Part shown: in pieces, positions 2,014 to 22,920 of the stretch | Layout of the letters: every line of letters begins with the position of its first letter | Position numbering within the stretch: the stretch's first letter is position 1 | The notes under the pieces: model-generated | What the model was told of the DNA's origin: nothing | Seen by the model: the letters and a program-made list of their open reading frames with translations, nothing else | Databases searched by the model: none | Made by a program: the position numbers and the translations under genes | Assembly (NCBI RefSeq): GCF_048593235.1 | Contig: NC_133618.1 | Span: forward strand, 388,944,562 to 389,008,561 | Source of the DNA: Sminthopsis crassicaudata | Taxonomy: Eukaryota | Direction of reading: 5' to 3' | Length of the DNA: 64,000 nt

Positions 2014-2447
2014 TGGCCTTCAGCAGTCCTCCCTCCAGGTCATCTCTAGGAGGGCTCTCTTGAGAAGACTTGGAATCTGGGTCAGCATGGATAGGCAGCA
2101 CACCTGACTGTATAGTTATCGAGGATAGAGTCAGGCTATCTTGCCCTATATCCAGCTTCCCCAGGATTTTAATTGCCTCAGCTGCTCCAGACCACAGATG
2201 TTTTCTCCTTGTCCTGTACCTCTATCCTTCCTTCTTCCCACCAGCATCTGTGCTTCTAAACTGTGTGTATGTTCAAACCTGCTTCTTCCACTACTGATTA
2301 TCCTATGGCATACTTAGTTCCTCATCAGTCTGATAGTGTAGGAGCCAGCTCCATCACTCAATTTTACCAGATGGACTATAGGCTTCCCCCCCACTCTTCT
2401 TCTTGCCATTACTTACCTACCTAAAGGCCTAGGTTGGTAGAGTGGGG

Positions 2448-3410
2448 ATGAATGTGGAAGAAGGGGGCATACCGGGCATAGGGCGCCCAAGCCAGGCCCG
2501 ATGGGTGCTTATGCTCCTCCTGTCCACGACCATGTATGGTGCCCACGCCCCGCTGTTGGCCTTGTGTCGAATAGATGGCCATGTCCCTTTCCGCCCCTCT
2601 TCAGCTGTGCTTTGGACGGAACTGACCAAATTGCTGCTATCAGCATTCTCTCTGATGGCCCGACGGCAGCCCAGACTGTGGGACACTCTCCCGTGGCGCC
2701 AGGCTGCCCCTTTTGCACTCTCTGCACTGCTCTACGGTGCCAACAATAACCTCGTCATTCACCTGCAGCGGTACATGGATCCCAGCACCTACCAAGTGAT
2801 GAGCAACCTCAAGATTGGCAGTACAGCTCTCCTGTACTGCCTCTGCCTGAACCGCCGTCTCTCTGCCAGACAGGGGCTGGCACTGCTGCTGCTGACTGGT
2901 GCCGGAGCCTGTTACGCCGCCGCAGGCCTCCAGGATCCGCAAGGCCTCCTCCCACCCCCGCCAGCTGCGGCCATGCCCCTCCACGTGACCCCCCTGGGGC
3001 TGCTGCTGCTGCTCCTCTACTGCCTCATCTCAGGCCTCTCCTCAGTCTACACCGAGCTGCTCATGAAGAGGCAGCGCCTGCCCCTGGCCTTGCAGAACAT
3101 GTTCCTGTACTCCTTTGGGGTACTTATGAACTTGGGGCTCTATGTGGGAGGTGGGCCAGGCCCCGGGCTCCTAGAAGGCTTCTCAGCCTGGGCAGCATTG
3201 GTGGTTCTGAGCCAGGCCCTCAATGGACTGCTCATGTCAGCCATCATGAAGCATGGGAGCAGCATTACCCGGCTCTTTGTCGTCTCCTCTTCCCTGATTG
3301 TCAATGCTGTGCTCTCAGCCACCCTGCTTCACCTCCAGCTCACAGCTGCCTTCTTCCTGGCCCTCCTGCTTATTGGACTGGCTGTACATCTCTATTATGG
3401 AGGCCGGTAG
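2448..3410 (+). CDS. SLC35A4: Probable UDP-sugar transporter SLC35A4 (320 aa, single coding exon)
   Basis: ORF MNVEEGGIPG...LYYGGR with multi-TM nucleotide-sugar transporter motifs (LYGANNNL, TYQVMSNLKI, SGLSSVYTE). The ATG is at 2448; the ORF track starts at an upstream GTG. Confidence 0.97.
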   Translation: MNVEEGGIPGIGRPSQARWVLMLLLSTTMYGAHAPLLALCRIDGHVPFRPSSAVLWTELTKLLLSAFSLMARRQPRLWDTLPWRQAAPFALSALLYGANNNLVIHLQRYMDPSTYQVMSNLKIGSTALLYCLCLNRRLSARQGLALLLLTGAGACYAAAGLQDPQGLLPPPPAAAMPLHVTPLGLLLLLLYCLISGLSSVYTELLMKRQRLPLALQNMFLYSFGVLMNLGLYVGGGPGPGLLEGFSAWAALVVLSQALNGLLMSAIMKHGSSITRLFVVSSSLIVNAVLSATLLHLQLTAAFFLALLLIGLAVHLYYGGR

Positions 3411-13054: not shown

Positions 13055-13060
13055 TTTAAT
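13055..13060 (-). terminator. Candidate polyA signal (ATTAAA) of the kinesin-like gene
   Basis: tttaat on the + strand, about 95 nt past the predicted stop codon. Confidence 0.45.
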
Positions 13061-13152: not shown

Positions 13153-16100
13153 TTAAACTTTTTTTCTCCTCTCTGTGACTTCTGTTGGGAGATAGGGGAG
13201 AATCAATGAAGCCCTGCTGGAGGATAAAGGCTGGTACCCCAGTCTCATCTCCCCTACTGGTATTCCTCTGTGGTTTAGGACAGAGCTCTAGGACATACTT
13301 GTGTCTCTACTTCTATTGTCTTCCCTATACTTTTCCTATTCATAGTCCTTACCCTGCTGGAGTTGCTTGTTCTGGACTTGGAGTTGTTGGTTCTGTGTGG
13401 CCAGAGAAATGGCATCTTGTAAAACTTCGGACAACAGGATTCGGTGATGGAGCTCCCTGGCAGCTGTCTGCTCCTTCCACAACTCCCGACAAGCCCGGAA
13501 CACCTATGTTTTTCATGGGTAGCTTTGTGATTAGAAGAATTCCAAGAAATCCCACCACCTACCTATTTAGCTGGGGCTTGAGTGCAGCCTGCCAGTATAA
13601 GATGTAGAATTCACAAATAGCATCCACTACTGACCTGCAGCATGTGGCAGGTCTGGGCCCGGGCTCCTTGCACATGCAGCTCATATAGAGCCTCTAGGTC
13701 CTGCTCAGCTGCATCTCGCTCCACTCTCAGTGCCTCCAACTTCAGGACCAGTGCTGTGTGGTCCTGTACCATCCGACTCTCAGCAGTCAGATCTGGGGCC
13801 TGTGATAGAAACCAGGTGTTTACTGAGGGAGAATAAGCCTACTCATCAGCCTTATACCTGGAGATGTGGGACTGACCTGATGTGTTGCTGTTTCCTTGTC
13901 CTGTCCCAACCAGCTTAGCTCCTCTTGGATCTGGGATTGGTGATGTTCCTGAAGCAGCTGCCTATGGGCCTGAGCTAACATAAACTGCAGGGCCACATCA
14001 GGGGCCTGTGAGACAGAACAAGGAGGACTTACATCCTAGTCTTTTCATCTGACCAAGTTCCATTTTCCTCTCCCTTAGAGCAGGAGTATTTAATCAGGGA
14101 TCCATTATATTTTAGGTATCTGTGAACTTGGATGAGGAAAAAAGATTATATATTTATTTTCACTAATTGTTAACTGAATCCTAGCATTTCCTTCAATTAT
14201 GAAAGTAGGCAACAAACCTCAATAGTATTTAAGCTTCACCAGATTGCCAGATTGGGACCACAACACAAAGAAGGTTTAAGAATTCCTGTTCTTCTGATAT
14301 ACAATGTTTTGCATGATTTCAAATATGTAATCGGTATCATATTGCTTGCTTTCTCAAAAGGGGAGGGGAAGGAAGAAAAGAGAGGGAGAAGTAAAATTTG
14401 AAACAAACAACAAAAAAAAGAATATTAAAAATAAAAATTTAGTTAGATTTTAAAAAGAATACCTGCCTAACTTCCCCCATTGGGGTCTATCGGTCTTCCC
14501 CAGTACAAGGTTCCCAATTATAATTACTATCCATACCACAGATTTAGGGGTTCAGCTCTAAAGGCTGTGTATTCCTGAGCAGTAAAATCATAACTACAGT
14601 CTAAGGGAGATGGTAGCTCCTAAAAGAAAAGGAGTTGTGGTCAGACCTCTGTATTGAAGTCCCAAGAACCTGAATCTAAATGTCTATTCTTTTATTTACT
14701 ACTTAGATAGTCTCAGAAAAATAACTTAATCTCTATTGTTCTCAATTTCCTTATCTGGAGAAAATGAGATTGGACTAGATTATCTAAAAGCTTCTTTTTA
14801 GCTCTATAATCCTGTGGTTCAAAAAATGATCACCTGTTCCCGATCATCACCACTCTCACCTAGATAAAACAATGGGACTTTCTCTCCCCCTTCTATAACT
14901 CAACATGCTCCTTTGTGATTCCTTTCCTCCTTTCAGACTTCATGGTATTTATTTTAACCCAATTTCACCCCCAGGAAGGGACATTACACAATGCCATTTG
15001 CCTTCTAGGGAACCCCCCCCATACTCCCTAAAGAAACAAATGAAGCTTTGCCTGTTTCTTGGAGCCCCCAAGAGGATAATTTCTTGATGCTGCTGGCAGG
15101 GGTGACTTCCTTCCCAGGTCCAGAGTTTCTGAAGTACCTGCTGCCAAAAAGAAATATTTTTATTCTAGGCAAAGACAGACAAAGCTGAAGAATCCCAAGG
15201 AAATAGTGTCTGGGATGTAGACCTGAGACTCACCTTGAAGATGCTTCTTGAAAACAGGGGAAAAGGCCTCTTCTAGTTCTAGCACCTAAATGGAGAATGT
15301 GTTGTAATGCAACACCTTCTCTCAAGCCTTCTCTCAAGGATGGAGAGATTTTCATTTTAGTGCAAAAGGTTTGTTTTAAGCAATTATAAATATCACTAAG
15401 GTATAATTGATAACATTGAAAAGAAAGGATTCTAAAATGACAACATACAAATAACAATAACAAACTTTTCAAAAGTTTAAGAATGTTGATCAACAAATGC
15501 CATGATTTATCTTGACTCCAGAGGACTCCTGATGAAACAGGCTACTTCCTGACCAGAGAGGAAAGAATGAAGGCCCATATTGCAACACATTTTTATAGAC
15601 ATGTCCAATGCAAGGATTTGTGATTTTTAAATGGACTATTTTAAGGCAGAGGCAGCTTGATCTAGTGGACAGAGTGCTGGACTTGCAGTCTAGAACATCT
15701 GGGTTTAAATCCTACAGTGACAAGCTAGGCCATGATTATATATACTTTAAATGACAGACAATTCTGTTAAAATTGATTTGTTTGTCCTTCCTTTTTCAAT
15801 AGGGGTAAAGAATAAGTAGGAAGGGAGAGAAAATTAATTCTTAATTGAAAAAAATGAAATTAAAATTTTAAACTAAGGAATAAGATGGTGACATCAGATG
15901 TTAGGTTGCAATAATATTCAGAATACTTATCTTTTTTCCTTCAAGATAAACAGGTATCCAAATAAATAGTTATCAGTGTTTTTTAGTTTGAGTATAGTGC
16001 TTGAGATAAAAGCAGGACTAAAAGGAATACCTAGTAATCCTAGGAAGGAAAATAGTAGGGAAACATCTTTGAAAGAAGATGGAGATCTAGGAATACCTTA

Positions 16101-19100
16101 GGTGGTATATGTACTCCTGGCCATACTCTTTCCTTTCTCTTGAAAATTTGAAAATTATTACTGTTCACTGAAGCCTTTGATCTCTGATTTATTGAAATAG
16201 GACTTTACATCACAAAAATCCCTGCTGCTATAGAAAATAGAATTTTCCATTAAAGTATACAAAGGAGATAGACTTTAACATGTTTATAATTTACACATAT
16301 TGCCTGAGGAGGCTCAGCAATATTAAGTCATCATGGCCCACTTTGTCACTGTAGGATTTGAACCCAGATGTTCTAAATTGCAAGTCCAGCACTCTGTCCA
16401 CAAGACCAAGCTGCCACTGCCTTAAAATAGACCATTTTTAAAAAGCCATAGTAAAGTATTCCTCTTTGTATCCCTAATGGCTGCTTGTCCTCTTGCCTAC
16501 TTCTAGTTCTGTACCAGCTTTGGAATCAAGTACATTGTGAAAGGGTGCTGTAAGAAGAGCCTGAGCCCCAGAGCATTGCAATGTGTGCATTGCAATGAGA
16601 AGACCATATCAAGATCAAGGGAACTGGAGCCAGATACCTGCAGGTTTGGAAGCCTGGTTACAGACGCTCCAGCTCGATTGAGCACCCTGGTCCCCCAGCT
16701 CCGGCTTTGGTTTTTCAGTACCTGTAAATAGCAGGTTCAGTCCATACTTTCCAGAACCCCTGATACCCTACATAGAGGGCTAGTGTCTAGTTCTGTCTCA
16801 CCTTCAATTCCCTGAGGACCAGGCTCAGCTGGGTAAGCTGGCTCTCCTGTAGAGTCGTTCCAGAAAGCCCAGAACGCAGCTCCTGAACAGTGGCGTAACG
16901 AGTGTGGATTTCTTCCAAAGCATCCCATAGTGTGGGAGAAATCTGTTTCCCCTGGCGGGGGTCCCGAACTCCTTCGGCCCCTGCTAGTGAGGCCAAGAGC
17001 AGACCCAAGGGGATGGCTGCCAGAGAGAATAGGCAAGGAGTGGGGCCACTTTAGGTAATGGGGGGGGCCTTTGATATAGTCAAAAAACAATCCTGTCCCC
17101 TCCTCCCAACCTCTCTTGCCAAGAATCACACTGAGCAGCCTCTTTCCACCGAACTGGCACTGAGTAAAAAGCCTGGATGAGGAGCCAATGCAGAGGCCAA
17201 AGCAGGATTTGGTAGCAGAACTTCCTGGTGATTCTCCCCAGAAAGGGTTAAGTCTCATTTCCTCATTTTTTCCTTCCCTCCCTTCTCTCCTTCATACCTC
17301 GGAGATCCAAGTGAAGCAACAGGCTGTTGTAACTATTTCCAAAGAGTAACTGAGTCACGATCCAAGGCAAGGAGCCAGTATGGGCCTTAGAAGCCTTCCC
17401 TGCCAGTACCAGCAATAAGGGGCAGTCCCTACAAGGAGTGACGGCTAAGGTCAGGCACAGTTTAGCTCCTAGTTATGGGTTAAGGAGAATAACTGTCCCT
17501 TATGTGGAACCCTCAAACTGCTGCCCTGGGCTTCACCCCAAGTTGGACTCACAGAGCTTCTGGAAGCTGCAGGACTCTCAATGAGCCTCGACACATGCTT
17601 CTGGCCCAGGGCCTCTTTATGATACTGGGCCCCAGGCAGGATATCGTCAAGGTGAGAAGGGAGCAGGCCCTGGAAGAGAAGATGGTTAAGTTAGTGGCAC
17701 TTCTTCTTAGATTGAGCTCTAAGTTTGTATTTCCTCCCCTCATCCTTTCTGCCAGAGTCCACAGGCTCACAGACCTGTCCAAGCCTTTCATTGCCCTGAG
17801 ATAAAGTTGGCAGCCAGACTTGAAATCAAGGATTTCTGCTTCACTCGCACCTTCTGCTACCCTGGGGGAAAAGGGGGAAATATATAAGTTTGGAGCACTC
17901 CTGGACTATAACCCTCTGCCATAGGTCCCTTCAAAGCATTAAATCCCAGACATAAGAACAAAATGAGCAGGTAACCCATAATCACATAGACAGACTAACC
18001 CTGAATAGGACAGCTGTACAGTGGAGAGAGCACCAGCTCTGAAGTCAGGAAGCCCTGAGTGCAAATATGGTCTCAGACACTTAACACTTTCTAGCTGTGT
18101 GACCCATCACAAGTCACTTAACNNNNNNNNNNNNNNNNNNNNNNNNNNNNNNNNNNNNNNNNNNNNNNNNNNNNNNNNNNNNNNNNNNNNNNNNNNNNNN
18201 NNNNNNNNNNNNNNNNNNNNNNNNNNNNNNNNNNNNNNNNNNNNNNNNNNNNNNNNNNNNNNNNNNNNNNNNNNNNNNNNNNNNNNNNNNNNNNCAAAAC
18301 TCAGTAGTCAGGCTTTTGTGGGAATGGTGCTAGGAGGTGGGGAGGAAGGGAGAGCAGTACTAAGAAAAGATATTCACAACCTGGGCAAAGTAGCATACTT
18401 ACAGACCCAGTGGGGACACATCCAGGAAATTCAGGTCACTAGTTCCAGGTAATAATAAGTCTCGACCCGTCCCACTAGAAGTGAGCTAAAGGGAAGGAGA
18501 AAATGTGAGGGATAAGTCTGTGTAGAACTCATAAAAACTTCCAAATCTTGGAGAAAACTTTTCAGGGCTCCTCAATTACTGAAAATGACTTTTAAGCTCT
18601 TTTCACCTGCACTAGACTTAGGGTCCGGAGGGAAGGTTCAGAAGCACTGTGAAGTTGAGTTTCCTCAAACAGCATTGCCAGCAGCTGGAAATTATTAAGG
18701 TAAAGGTGGAGTGGGGATGAGAGAAAAGATTGGTTCGGAGTCCAAACAAACCCAGACTATATGGTTAGGTAAGGTGGATTCTAGATCCTCACCTGAGGAA
18801 CCAGATCCAATTGCTTGGCTTCTCTTCCCCTAATGATTACAGACACACTGTAACCTCTGGATACTGAGCCCAACACAGCCCGAATGTTCTTCATAAACTC
18901 CTGCTCTGCTTCCTAAATTAATAGGCAGGAGTTCACCTTTTTGGGGAAAGAAATCATCTCCCTGTTCCACCAGGTTCCTAGATCTTCAGATTTGGTTACC
19001 CTACTCTTCCTTTGTCCCAGCCCATGTTCCCCTCCTCTCCCCGAAATAGCATTCTCCGACTTGGAAAGGCATAGAAAATTGTCTCAAGAGCAGTATGGGG

Positions 19101-19700
19101 TATGATGTTAAGAACCAACAGAATAAGACAAGTGGCACAAGGGCTTGCCCCCCCCCACCTTTCTCCCCTCTCCCGCCTTCTTATTTTACCTGTGCATGTT
19201 CTGGGCCTAGGACTCGGTCAAATGTGAATCGATGCTCCTAGATGTAAGACCAGAGTTATGAAGATCAATTCTCATTTACAGCCTCTTTTTCCTCCATCCA
19301 TTTTTCCCACCTTTCCCAACCCCAACAATACCAGAGTCTCAGGTTCTCCTAGATCTAGCAAGAGCATTTTAGAACCATGTAGAAGGAATCTGAGGCTTCC
19401 AGTGTCATGACCTATAATAGAGAGTTCACTGTAACATTCTGTTTTTTTGGTTTGTTTGTTTGGTTTTTTTTCCATGCTGACAGCAGAAAACAGCCCCAGC
19501 CTACCACCTCCAGGATTCCTTCTAGGCTTGACCTCTTAGAAGGAATTTCTCACCTGCCTCTGACAAGGATGTTGCTTTTACAACCACTGTTACTGTTGCA
19601 GACCCAACCTGGAAGGGAGAGAAGATAATGAGGCCCCGAGCCTGAGCCAAAAGGAAGGTTCGGAGGGGAAGTTTCTGCTCACCTGCTCACTGCCAGCCAT
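13153..19700 (-). CDS. Kinesin-like protein with degenerate motor domain and C-terminal coiled coils (about 595 aa, 19 coding exons)
   Basis: Phase-compatible exons, 5' to 3': 19700-19683, 19608-19554, 19411-19332, 19237-19190, 18912-18793, 18684-18607, 18485-18403, 17861-17775, 17669-17553, 17428-17298, 17016-16802, 16721-16638, 16560-16501 (tentative), 15285-15234, 15137-15052 (GC donor), 14005-13877, 13799-13635, 13503-13353, 13181-13153. The total is 1788 nt with no internal stop. Kinesin-like segments include EHRFTFDRVLGPEHAQ, GSVSRGYSVSVIIRG, GRDLLLP, VAEGASEAEI, RACSLLTLTI and LLFGNSYNSLLLHL. The position between SLC35A4 and CD14 matches mouse E230025N22Rik as recalled. Confidence 0.85.
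18010..18122 (+). mobile_element. WSINE1-like SINE truncated by an assembly gap (intron of the kinesin-like gene)
   Basis: gtggagagagcaccagctctgaagtcaggaag...caagtcacttaac. Confidence 0.8.
18123..18294. other. Assembly gap (N run)
   Basis: 172 N. It is intronic, and the flanking exon phases join without needing a hidden exon. Confidence 0.99.
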
Positions 19701-20864: not shown

Positions 20865-22920
20865 TCAGGCAAATCCTCTGACCCCGCACAGCAGCACCAA
20901 GGCTGCGGTCCCAGAGACCTGAAAGGCTAGCGGCGAGCCCACGGAGGGCCTGCTTCCTCTGGAAGGAACTCCTTCACAGTCCTCCGACGCTTCCTCCCTC
21001 CGCGACCTGGCTAACGCACTGCTTTGGGTAAAGGGGTTTCCTTCGAGGACCAGCTCGGTCCCCTGGTCCTTTAGGACCGGCTGCTTCGTCAGCAGGTTGT
21101 AGCTTAGGACCAGCTGCTGTAGCTTGTGTGGCAGAGACTTCGGCACACACCTCAGCTTTGCGTGGGACAAGTTAAGGGAGGTCAGGGTGGGTGGCCAGGT
21201 GCACTGAACGGAGGGAGCATTGCTCAGCTCGTTATAACTGATGTCCAGTCGCTGCACTTTTAGCCCCTTCGCCTCCAGACCCCGGCACACTCCTCCCAGG
21301 GACTGGAGGCTGGTGTTCCTAAGCGCCAGCTCCCGCAGCTCCTGGAGCTCCTTGAGGCAGAGGGCCGCGGTTAAGCCACTCTCTCCGATTTCTGGATTGT
21401 CCGACAGATCTAGAGAGTTTAATTCCTTGAAGGGGGCCAAGATGGAGCAGGGCACATTGCTCAGGCCCGAATCAGTCAAGCTCAGCGTCTTCAGTCCGGG
21501 TTTTAGCCAAGTCGATATCGCCGCTATTAAATTGCTCTCTCCGGCTAGCGACACTCTGTTGAGCTTCAAGGCTTTCAGGGCCAGGGCCTCATCACCAGGA
21601 GATCGCGGTTGGAGGGGCGGGTGCGAAACCCCCAGATCTTCCAGCGCCAGCTCCTGAGTCCGCGTGTAGGTCAGCGCCTGCAGGAGCTGGTACAGAAGGG
21701 GAGCCGGGACCTGGGCATCTTTTAGCTTCAGCCGTCTCAGGCGCAGCGATCGCAGCAAGTCTGCGGCTTTTCTGATGTCGGCATCGCCGCCTTTCGGCAA
21801 AAAGATTTCCAAGTTGTGACCGCCCCCGTGGATCTCCACCTCTATAGAGGAAAGGCACATCTGAAGACTATTCCAGTTGGGCTCCGGGGTGGAAAAGTTG
21901 CAGAAGCAGTTATCACCCTCTTCGTCCAGGATGCAAGTGGCTGAGGATGGCCAGGGAAGCACCAGCAGGGAGGAGAGCAGCAGCAGCGACAACCGCTGCC
22001 AGGGGACCTGGGAATGACATCAGCTGTTAATCTCAAGGCTAGCTAGTCCGCTGCTGGGAAACAGGAGAATCAGGGCAGCCGGAATGGCCGAAGTATTAGT
22101 GTCCAGGTCCAAAAGGTGACCCCCAAAGTTAGTCACAGATGGGTGTGGCCAGGTTTCTCAAAAGAATTTCCACTCTTGAACCCATCTCCAAGTCAAGGGG
22201 CAAAGTTTATTGTAATCATAACGCCAATGGAAGAAGGCTAAGTTCCTAACGGATTTAGCAAAGAACCGGGGGCTTGGGACAAATTTATCCAGTTCTTAAA
22301 GTAGATGGTATGCTAATTTTATAGTCCCGAGGTAAATTGCAGAGTGTCTATTCACTATTGTCTCAGGAATTTGGTTGTCACTGACCAGTGTTTCCTATAT
22401 CTGTCAGTAATATTTGTAGGACTATTCTAAAGGGAGGAAGACCTTAGAATCTATAACAGATTGTTAGAACAAAAGCACTCCAAAGTCGGGAGACCTCATC
22501 ACTGCTGTTTCCCCTAGAAGCATTAGGACTACTTTAACCTCAGAACCCAGCCCAAAGACTTCATTTTCTCTTTTTTCAAATACTATCTTTCCCCAATCCT
22601 CTCCCAGCCTCCCGCTCAACAACCCTAGTTAAGTAGCTCCAGACCAGCGCTGAAAAGCTTTAGGGTTTGGGAGAGGCACAGATAGAAAACTGGACCAGGG
22701 ATCCAGAGGATAGTCTCAGACATTTCCCAGGTGTGTCACCCTGTTTACCTCAGTTCCTCATCAGTAAAAATCATTTTAAAATGAGCTGGAGAAGGAAATG
22801 GCAAGCCACTGGAGTATCTTTGCCAAAACAAACAAAAACCCAAATGAGATCATAGAGAGTCGAACAGAGTTAACAACAAAAGTGGGGGGGAGGTAAGGTG
22901 CGACATAGAACACTCACCAT
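20865..22920 (-). CDS. CD14: Monocyte differentiation antigen CD14 (381 aa)
   Basis: Exon 1 contributes only the ATG (22920-22918, Kozak ccaccATG, donor GTGAGT). The intron is 22917-22008 and exon 2 is 22007-20865. The protein has a signal peptide, N-terminal CILDEEGDNCFCNFSTPEPNW, LRRs (LDLSDNP, LDISYN, LNLS, LVLSYN, LEGNPF) and a GPI-type tail VSGTAALVLLCGVRGFA. An ATG-only first exon is the known CD14 structure. Confidence 0.96.
22690..22880 (+). mobile_element. MAR1/MIR-type SINE in the CD14 intron
   Basis: aaatgagctggagaaggaaatggcaagccact...gtatctttgccaa...agagtcgaaca is the RTE-derived tail of MAR1. Confidence 0.75.

What the first reader, a model, noticed from the sequence alone, without database searches (positions are those of the whole stretch)
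13153..19700. Hidden intact 19-exon kinesin-like gene between SLC35A4 and CD14
The ORF track shows only scraps of this gene, mostly in the wrong frame. Manual splicing gives 19 small minus-strand exons with compatible phases and an open frame of about 595 aa: an N-terminal kinesin-fold region, a neck/coil, a low-complexity linker and a coiled-coil tail. Such a phase-consistent chain is very unlikely by chance (seen in sequence). From recall, mouse has an uncharacterised gene here (E230025N22Rik) and human has no recognised protein-coding gene here, so this may be an ancient therian gene with lineage-specific loss and no known function (inference).
Basis: partly seen in the sequence, partly recalled or inferred. 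Interest (0 to 1): 0.85.

Follow-up and report, generated by a model that had tools for sequence, protein, structure and literature searches.

The report
Annotated dead-kinesin gene beside CD14
The stretch holds a real, spliced, evolutionarily constrained gene, the fat-tailed dunnart counterpart of the uncharacterised mouse gene E230025N22Rik, whose protein looks like a kinesin motor that has lost its ATP-binding parts; public databases already annotate the gene, but nobody has studied it.

Summary
The exon chain is real, but it has 18 coding exons and 575 aa, not 19 exons and about 595 aa. My spliced model from the window (ATG at 19700, stop codon at 13155-13153, minus strand) is identical to RefSeq "uncharacterized protein LOC141556791 isoform X2" of Sminthopsis crassicaudata. 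The gene is therefore not hidden from public annotation.

The N gap (18123-18294) lies inside intron 7. The phases fit across it, and none of 38 orthologues has extra residues at that junction.

Orthologues occur across marsupials and placentals. Several are named "Riken cDNA E230025N22 gene". A CD14-like gene lies directly upstream in four other marsupials. No ape or human protein turned up when I searched with a macaque orthologue.

Selection is purifying: dN/dS is 0.30 against koala and 0.32 against Dromiciops. Only the linker looks neutral.

The kinesin link is consistent but below formal thresholds:
- Pfam hits fall under the gathering score.
- The family profile hits only kinesins in the PDB (best E 0.004).
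- A low-confidence AlphaFold model matches kinesin motors (Foldseek E 8e-6, VIA Z 9.3).
- Language-model neighbours are mostly kinesins.

The P-loop is deleted in all 86 family members checked, and the places aligned with switch I and switch II are degenerate. It is most likely a non-catalytic pseudo-kinesin on a helical tail. No splice-junction reads could be obtained.

The parts
19683..19700 (-). coding exon 1 (aa 1-6, ATG at 19700)
   Evidence: GT donor; start of P0144
19554..19608 (-). coding exon 2 (aa 7-24)
   Evidence: AG/GT; conserved in koala and Dromiciops
19332..19411 (-). coding exon 3 (aa 25-51)
   Evidence: needed to keep the phase between exons 2 and 4
19190..19237 (-). coding exon 4 (aa 52-67; FTFDRV motif as in kinesin motors)
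18793..18912 (-). coding exon 5 (aa 68-107); place of the deleted P-loop; skipped in isoform X7 (P0001)
18607..18684 (-). coding exon 6 (aa 108-133)
18403..18485 (-). coding exon 7 (aa 134-160, ends two bases into a codon)
18123..18294 (.). assembly gap (N) inside intron 7; hides no coding exon
17775..17861 (-). coding exon 8 (aa 161-189)
17553..17669 (-). coding exon 9 (aa 190-228); places aligned with switch I and switch II, both degenerate
17298..17428 (-). coding exon 10 (aa 229-272)
16802..17016 (-). coding exon 11 (aa 273-344); end of the motor-like part and the neck helices
16638..16721 (-). coding exon 12 (aa 345-372); skipped in isoforms X4 and X5
15234..15285 (-). coding exon 13 (aa 373-389, linker)
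15052..15137 (-). coding exon 14 (aa 390-418, linker); tandem acceptor (15140 or 15137) and GC donor
13877..14005 (-). coding exon 15 (aa 419-461, start of the helical tail)
13635..13799 (-). coding exon 16 (aa 462-516)
13353..13503 (-). coding exon 17 (aa 517-566)
13153..13181 (-). coding exon 18 (aa 567-575 and TAA stop at 13155-13153)
13055..13060 (-). ATTAAA, a likely polyadenylation signal about 95 bases after the stop
   Evidence: pattern only
20865..21992 (-). upstream neighbour: CD14-like leucine-rich-repeat ORF (375 aa)
   Evidence: the same neighbour lies upstream of the orthologue in koala, Dromiciops and opossum, and an upstream 369-aa gene without Pfam record in wallaby
2442..3410 (+). 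downstream neighbour: nucleotide-sugar transporter ORF (SLC35A4-like), convergent with this gene

Best explanation
This is a real protein-coding gene of the fat-tailed dunnart (RefSeq LOC141556791), the orthologue of mouse E230025N22Rik. It has 18 coding exons on the minus strand between CD14 and SLC35A4.

The 575-aa protein has four parts:
- an N-terminal domain of about 300 aa that descends from a kinesin motor;
- two neck-like helices;
- a disordered linker that evolves close to neutrally;
- a long helical tail.

The motor-like domain lacks the phosphate-binding loop through an 11-residue deletion. The places aligned with switch I and switch II are degenerate, the stretch between strand 7 and helix 5 is about half its usual length, and the domain is acidic in most species. 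It therefore cannot be an ATP-driven motor.

Inference: it works as a non-catalytic kinesin-fold module held on a probably dimeric helical tail. That would make it a scaffold or a regulatory partner of other proteins, possibly of a true kinesin, rather than a transporter.

Shown here: the gene model, the orthology, the purifying selection and the loss of the P-loop. The loss of switch I and II rests on a weak alignment. The non-motor role and any partner are inferred.
For: Gene model:
- The spliced translation is identical to P0144.
- Splice sites and exon lengths are conserved in koala and Dromiciops.

Orthology and synteny:
- 136 to 195 mammalian proteins match at E below 1e-5, some named 'Riken cDNA E230025N22 gene'.
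- A CD14-like gene lies upstream in other marsupials.

Selection:
- dN/dS is 0.30 against koala (bootstrap 0.23-0.39) and 0.32 against Dromiciops (0.23-0.41).
- By region, the tail gives about 0.2, the motor-like part 0.31-0.41 and the linker 0.7-1.1.
- dN is 0.10, against an intron distance of 0.24.

Transcription: exon 11 is held completely by nine runs labelled RNA; seven of them hold only 13-24% of the 6-kb genomic stretch, one (X1) holds 69%, and one was not among the runs listed for that stretch. Other runs of the same studies hold none of exon 11.

Kinesin descent:
- The family profile against PDB sequences gives 13 hits, all kinesins, best KIFC3 at E 0.004.
- In Pfam, Kinesin is the family most often hit (20 of 86 members, best E 5e-4), with Microtub_bd in 10 of 86. 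The dunnart domain scores E 0.0029 and 0.083.
- Foldseek places nearly only kinesins among the top 50 PDB matches, with E down to 7.8e-6.
- VIA-align gives Z 9.3 to rat kinesin 2kin_A over 153 residues at 3.6 A.
- All top 30 AlphaFold DB Swiss-Prot matches are kinesins.
- About 90 of 100 language-model neighbours are kinesin clusters.
- UniProt names two whale orthologues 'Kinesin motor domain-containing protein'.

Dead motor:
- There is an 11-residue gap opposite GQTGAGKTYTM of KIFC3.
- No Walker A pattern occurs in any of 86 members.
- LDRAC stands where SSRSH would be, and QLPEAL where DLAGSE would be.
- The median net charge of the domain is -9.
Against: - No kinesin match reaches a curated threshold: Pfam Kinesin scores 12.3 bits against a cut-off of 29.3.
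- Full-length proteins scanned singly gave no kinesin hit.
- Both structure models have low confidence (mean pLDDT 55 and 50).
- The second, domain-only model gave no significant fold match, although kinesins still ranked first.
- Only model residues 45-207 superpose on kinesins.
- The alignment of the switch I and II region to KIF14 is statistically weak (E 0.14).
- Dromiciops has a 1-base deletion in linker exon 14, and its annotated protein skips exons 13-14.
- Old World monkey models are short and patchy, so the gene may be decaying in some lineages.
- Nothing here tests what the protein binds.
Confidence: 0.75

Rival explanations
1. The locus is a transcribed relic, a unitary pseudogene or non-coding RNA, whose open frame survives by chance or by recent descent. 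No functional protein is made.
For: - The linker evolves close to neutrally (dN/dS 0.7-1.1).
- Dromiciops has a 1-base deletion in exon 14.
- There are many isoforms that skip exons, including the exon at the P-loop place.
- Monkey models are patchy and no ape protein was found.
- A paper reports dN/dS above 1 in hares (PMC6065068).
Against: - The frame is intact over 575 codons in the dunnart and across all mapped exons (1-17 of the 18) in koala. It is intact in Dromiciops apart from the linker.
- The bootstrap interval of dN/dS stays well below 1 for the motor-like part and for the tail.
- dN is less than half the intron divergence.
- Full-length orthologues exist across placentals at 45-55% identity.
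Confidence: 0.08
2. It is a real gene, but its N-terminal domain is not related to kinesins. The weak matches would come from a common alpha/beta arrangement and a shared coiled-coil tail.
For: - All sequence matches are under the curated thresholds.
- TM-scores are 0.2-0.3 and the models have low confidence.
- The domain-only model gave E of 0.035 or worse.
- The tool notes that Z of 7-8 is common for unrelated folds.
Against: - Four different methods all point to kinesin motors and to almost nothing else.
- The matches are collinear and fall on known motor landmarks: FxFDxV, GY/F-N/S-V before the P-loop place, LFEE after it, strand 6 after switch I, and helix 5, strand 8 and helix 6.
- The PDB hits lie in the motor domain, not in the coiled coil.
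Confidence: 0.1
3. It is a working ATP-driven kinesin motor with an unusual active site.
For: The overall N-terminal-motor, neck and coiled-coil layout resembles transport kinesins.
Against: - No Walker A motif occurs in any of 86 members.
- The P-loop is deleted.
- The residues aligned with switch I and II are replaced.
- The stretch between strand 7 and helix 5, which holds the usual microtubule contacts, is about half the usual length (comparison with kinesin-1 is from my own knowledge).
Confidence: 0.02

Closest known systems
Mouse E230025N22Rik and the 'uncharacterized protein LOC...' orthologues of other mammals
   Same: Full-length sequence similarity: E 1e-95 to the Mus spicilegus entry of that name, and 45-55% identity to placentals. 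The domain order is the same, the P-loop deletion is the same, and the neighbour CD14 is the same in marsupials.
   Different: Nothing of substance; this is the dunnart member of that group. The linker and some exons vary between species. No function is on record for any member.
Kinesin superfamily motor domain (Pfam PF00225 and PF16796)
   Same: Collinear weak sequence matches, the predicted strand and helix order, and structural superposition of about 150 residues. The motor is followed by neck-like helices and a helical stalk, as in kinesins with N-terminal motors.
   Different: The P-loop is deleted, switch I and II are not conserved, there is no RxRP-like start, and the domain is about 60-70 residues shorter and acidic. 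Scores fall under the family thresholds. It is not among the 45 named mammalian KIF genes (my own knowledge).
Vik1 and Cik1 of budding yeast: non-catalytic 'motor homology domains' paired with the kinesin-14 Kar3 (PMC4338441, PMC3384419; titles and abstracts seen)
   Same: A kinesin-like fold without a nucleotide site sits on a coiled coil and works as a partner rather than as an enzyme. This is a resemblance in kind.
   Different: Vik1's domain is C-terminal, fungal and still binds microtubules (my own knowledge). No sequence relation was tested here. Whether the dunnart protein pairs with a true kinesin or binds microtubules is unknown.
Degenerate animal kinesins: KIF26A/B (kinesin-11), Costal-2/KIF7, C. 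elegans VAB-8 (my own knowledge)
   Same: Kinesin-derived proteins that have given up motility and act as scaffolds or static binders.
   Different: Those proteins still score as kinesin motors and keep recognisable nucleotide-site remnants and microtubule binding. This family has lost far more. Not tested here.

Membership tests
E230025N22Rik orthologue group (mammals) | Full-length sequence similarity to proteins carrying that name | tested here: met
   P0129, P0140 and P0159 ('Riken cDNA E230025N22 gene') match the dunnart protein at E 1e-95 to 1e-81. They also match the cat orthologue.
E230025N22Rik orthologue group (mammals) | Position between CD14 and SLC35A4 | tested here: met
In the window, a CD14-like ORF lies upstream and a nucleotide-sugar transporter ORF downstream. 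A CD14-like gene lies upstream in koala, Dromiciops and opossum, and a gene of similar size in wallaby.
Kinesin superfamily | Match to the kinesin motor profile above the curated threshold | tested here: not met
   PF00225 scores 12.3 bits (cut-off 29.3) and PF16796 17.9 bits (cut-off 27) for residues 1-345. The best family member reaches E 5e-4. There was no hit for the full-length proteins.
Kinesin superfamily | P-loop GxxxxGK[ST] | tested here: not met
   There is an 11-residue gap opposite GQTGAGKTYTM of KIFC3. The pattern is absent in all 86 members.
Kinesin superfamily | Switch I (SSRSH) and switch II (DxxGxE) | tested here: not met
   The aligned places read LDRAC and QLPEAL in the dunnart, GRAC and QLPGAL in the consensus. 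The alignment itself is weak (E 0.14).
Kinesin superfamily | Kinesin motor fold | tested here: inconclusive
   Model 1 gives Foldseek E 7.8e-6 and VIA Z 9.3 over 153 residues at 3.6 A, and almost all top matches are kinesins. However, pLDDT is 55, TM is 0.2-0.3, and the second model gave no significant match.
Kinesin superfamily | Microtubule binding and ATPase activity | not testable with these tools
   Indirect only: a shortened stretch between strand 7 and helix 5, and an acidic domain.
Non-catalytic kinesin-fold partners (Vik1/Cik1 kind) | Heterodimer with a catalytic kinesin through the coiled coil | not testable with these tools
   No partner data exist. Long helices are predicted at 305-360, 422-458 and 465-574. 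A simple heptad count was inconclusive.

The most novel reading that the evidence does not exclude
A mammal-wide, and possibly older, pseudo-kinesin outside the canonical list of 45 KIF genes has been kept under purifying selection for more than 100 million years after losing its whole nucleotide site. It would act as a non-catalytic partner or regulator of a true kinesin or of another cytoskeletal complex, as Vik1 does in yeast, and it has been lost or disabled in apes including humans.
Probability: 0.2. Interest if true: 0.65.

Novelty: new member of a known kind. Interest (0 to 1): 0.4.

Why it matters
If the reading holds, mammals carry one more kinesin-derived gene than the standard census, and it is catalytically dead yet conserved. 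Pseudo-enzymes of this type usually turn out to be regulators or scaffolds. A mouse knockout and a partner screen are directly feasible. The apparent absence from apes would make it a case of recent gene loss on the human lineage.

For the scan itself the lesson is more modest. The gene is not hidden: RefSeq already models it in this species.

Tried and rejected
- My first chain included two extra exon-like pieces (14859-14834 and 14619-14537). They break the phase, no annotated isoform uses them, and I dropped them.
- Pfam on single exons gave nothing, and Pfam on single full-length orthologues gave no kinesin hit. Only the N-terminal part alone and the survey of 86 members gave weak kinesin hits.
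- A second AlphaFold run on residues 1-345 with 86 sequences was worse than the first (pLDDT 50), and its Foldseek matches were not significant.
As a substitute I compared the shares of sampled words held by RNA runs for exon 11 and for the 6-kb stretch.
- A single-register heptad count on the helices was inconclusive.
- DNA of the opossum and wallaby loci could not be fetched, and the bilby protein was not on record, so dN/dS rests on two comparisons.
- I could not run a profile-profile comparison with kinesins or a tree with named KIFs, because no kinesin sequences were available under a session reference.
- I could not fetch the two AlphaFold DB hits that look like non-mammalian relatives.
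Full report
**What is in the sequence**

Reading the minus strand from 19900 to 13000, I rebuilt the exon chain by hand and by script. Exons 1 to 13 chain in frame once a small exon at 19411-19332 is included. The last four exons chain in frame among themselves.

My first drawing of the linker region included two exon-like pieces (14859-14834 and 14619-14537), and these broke the phase. The answer came from a search with exon 11 alone (window 16802-17014, 71 aa) against 1.84 billion representative proteins. It found a 535-aa protein with 100% identity over that exon. That protein joins exon 14 directly to the exon at 14005 through a GC donor.

The final model has 18 coding exons, 1728 bases and 575 aa. 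It is identical, residue for residue, to P0144, which is RefSeq "uncharacterized protein LOC141556791 isoform X2" of Sminthopsis crassicaudata. The window therefore comes from the fat-tailed dunnart, and the gene is already annotated there with at least seven numbered isoforms (X7 is the highest seen; four distinct sequences were retrieved):
- X7 skips exon 5.
- X4 and X5 skip exon 12.
- A tandem acceptor adds or drops one alanine at exon 14.

The count of 19 exons and the length of about 595 aa are not.

**The assembly gap**

The Ns at 18123-18294 lie in intron 7. Several results show that the gap hides no coding exon:
- Exon 7 ends two bases into a codon, and exon 8 is open only in the frame that completes it.
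- In an alignment of 38 orthologues, no sequence has an insertion between dunnart residues 140 and 185, which span this junction.
- The same intron measures 333 bases in koala and 523 in Dromiciops, against 541 here with the estimated Ns.
- The flank 18122-18018 matches many places in the Dromiciops locus, so it is a dispersed repeat. That is a common cause of such gaps.

**Neighbours and orthologues**

Upstream on the same strand lies a 375-aa leucine-rich-repeat ORF (20865-21992, CD14-like). Downstream on the other strand lies a nucleotide-sugar transporter ORF (2442-3410, SLC35A4-like).

Searches with the cat, dunnart and macaque proteins each returned 136 to 195 mammalian proteins:
- Nearly all are called "uncharacterized protein LOC...".
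- Three are called "Riken cDNA E230025N22 gene".
- Two whale entries are called "Kinesin motor domain-containing protein".
- One rabbit entry is oddly called "plectin".

Marsupial orthologues include koala, Dromiciops, sugar glider, tammar wallaby, opossum, bilby and brushtail possum. In koala, Dromiciops and opossum a 380- to 382-aa leucine-rich-repeat gene sits directly upstream of the orthologue. Wallaby has a 369-aa gene there.

With the macaque query, the nearest hits were other Old World monkeys (mostly short models), Saimiri and lemurs. No ape or human protein was among the best 120 of 195 hits.

**Is it under selection?**

I mapped the dunnart exons onto the koala (L001) and Dromiciops (L002) loci. 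Exons 2 to 17 were found by blastn in order, mostly at equal length, with AG and GT at the boundaries (Dromiciops exon 17 excepted, where a 21-base deletion left the donor unplaced). Exon 1 was placed at the annotated gene start, and exon 18 (29 bases) was not mapped. Koala also keeps the GC donor.

| Measure (Nei-Gojobori) | vs koala | vs Dromiciops |
|---|---|---|
| dN | 0.097 | 0.112 |
| dS | 0.325 | 0.350 |
| dN/dS, whole gene (bootstrap) | 0.30 (0.23-0.39) | 0.32 (0.23-0.41) |
| dN/dS, motor-like part | 0.31 | 0.41 |
| dN/dS, neck | 0.19 | 0.14 |
| dN/dS, tail | 0.23 | 0.18 |
| dN/dS, linker | 0.67 | 1.08 |

Aligned introns differ by a Jukes-Cantor distance of 0.24, and exons by 0.15. The protein is therefore constrained everywhere except in the linker. 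Dromiciops also has a 1-base deletion in linker exon 14, and its annotated protein skips exons 13 and 14.

**Is it transcribed?**

There is indirect evidence:
- Nine runs labelled RNA hold all sampled words of exon 11. Seven of them, from four studies, hold only 13-24% of the words of the 6-kb genomic stretch; one (X1) holds 69% and may carry unspliced or genomic material; one was not listed for that stretch.
- Other runs of the same studies hold none of exon 11.
- This is what exon-only, sample-specific RNA would give.
- One holder is labelled as a second organism.

**Is it a kinesin?**

No curated threshold is met, but every method points the same way.

| Method | Result |
|---|---|
| Pfam on dunnart residues 1-345 | Microtub_bd E 0.0029; Kinesin E 0.083 |
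| Pfam across 86 family members | Kinesin is the family most often hit (20 members, best E 5e-4) |
| Family profile against all PDB sequences | 13 matches up to E 10, all kinesin motors (KIFC3 E 0.004, then kinesin-1, KIF1A, KIF13B) |
| AlphaFold model, full length | Poor: mean pLDDT 55 |
| Foldseek of that model against PDB | Top 50 nearly all kinesin motors, E down to 7.8e-6 |
| VIA-align second look | Z 9.3 to rat kinesin 2kin_A over 153 residues at 3.6 A; dozens of kinesins at Z 7-8 covering model residues about 45-207 |
| AlphaFold DB Swiss-Prot | All top 30 matches are kinesins |
| Protein-language-model neighbours | About 90 of 100 are kinesin clusters |

The PDB alignments are collinear: FxFDxV, then GY-x-V, then LFEE. 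A second model of the domain alone was worse, and its matches were not significant. I put the kinesin descent at about 0.9.

**What has been lost**

- P-loop. Opposite GQTGAGKTYTM of KIFC3, the family has an 11-residue gap. No member of 86 has a Walker A pattern in the motor-like part.
- Switch I and II. A weak alignment to KIF14 (E 0.14) places LDRAC (consensus GRAC) at SSRSH and QLPEAL at DLAGSE. Strand 6 and the helix 5, strand 8 and helix 6 block stay recognisable.
- First strand. It reads TVTVVVKA instead of an RxRP-type start.
- Microtubule-contact region. Between strand 7 and helix 5 there are about 19 residues, where kinesin-1 has about 36 (my own knowledge of kinesin-1). The loop 11 and helix 4 region that makes the main microtubule contact is therefore cut by about half.
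- Charge. The domain has a median net charge of -9 across the family.

These losses are shared by marsupials and placentals, so they are at least as old as the split between them.

**How it most likely works**

With no nucleotide site, the protein cannot be a motor. The conserved core, the neck-like helices and the long C-terminal helices (pLDDT up to 92) suggest a folded kinesin-like module displayed on a probably dimeric stalk. I take it to be a scaffold or regulatory subunit.

The nearest known analogy is yeast Vik1/Cik1, non-catalytic motor-homology domains that pair with Kar3 (PMC4338441, PMC3384419). Whether this protein pairs with a kinesin, binds tubulin or binds something else is untested.

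**What is known**

The literature holds only incidental mentions of the mouse gene. Six papers name it. The two I opened list it among introgressed hare genes with dN/dS above 1 and in an expression table of uterine epithelium. A search for terms such as "pseudokinesin" found one paper, whose title and abstract concern kinesin allostery and which I did not open.

My tests agree with it.

**A lead on age**

The AlphaFold DB cluster search returned a 574-aa "kinesin motor domain-containing protein" (28% identity, E 6e-17) and a 968-aa one (20% identity), with matches along the length of the model. Their organisms are not shown. If they are not mammals, the family is older than mammals and could reveal the parent kinesin.

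**Verdict**

It is not hidden and it is not a working motor. It is an uncharacterised dead kinesin of moderate interest.

Noticed in passing
window 18018-18122: The flank of the assembly gap is a dispersed repeat. It matches at least seven separate places in the 14.6-kb Dromiciops locus at 80-87% identity.
   Followed up: partly
window 24035-24230: A second run of Ns (196 bases) lies upstream of CD14.
   Followed up: no
window 28322-29125 and 49859-50326 (minus strand): Two long ORFs (267 and 155 aa) have no Pfam match. They may be exons of neighbouring genes or repeats.
   Followed up: no
window 15052 (donor after exon 14); L001 7497: A non-canonical GC donor is conserved between dunnart and koala. 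Dromiciops has a GT donor at the corresponding place.
   Followed up: partly
L002 8055-8139: Dromiciops has a 1-base deletion in linker exon 14. Its annotated protein skips exons 13 and 14, which together keep the frame.
   Followed up: partly
proteins P0147 and P0003: The koala isoform X2 and P0003 (source not named; identical to the opossum protein over most of its length) read exon 17 in another frame, which gives a different, non-helical C-terminus. For koala, from my own reading of the sequence printed, this looks like an alternative acceptor 5 bases upstream; I ran no test of it.
   Followed up: partly
protein P0098: The rabbit orthologue is named 'plectin' in NCBI and UniRef. This looks like a naming error.
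   Followed up: no
AlphaFold DB hits A0A452GF36 and A0A484CXM4: Two 'kinesin motor domain-containing' proteins match along the length of the model at 28% and 20% identity. They are possibly relatives outside mammals. Their organisms are not shown and the sequences could not be fetched.
   Followed up: no
protein P0011: A 474-aa relative with a very arginine-, alanine- and glycine-rich make-up and no source name shares the P-loop deletion. It may come from a monotreme, but this is unverified.
   Followed up: no
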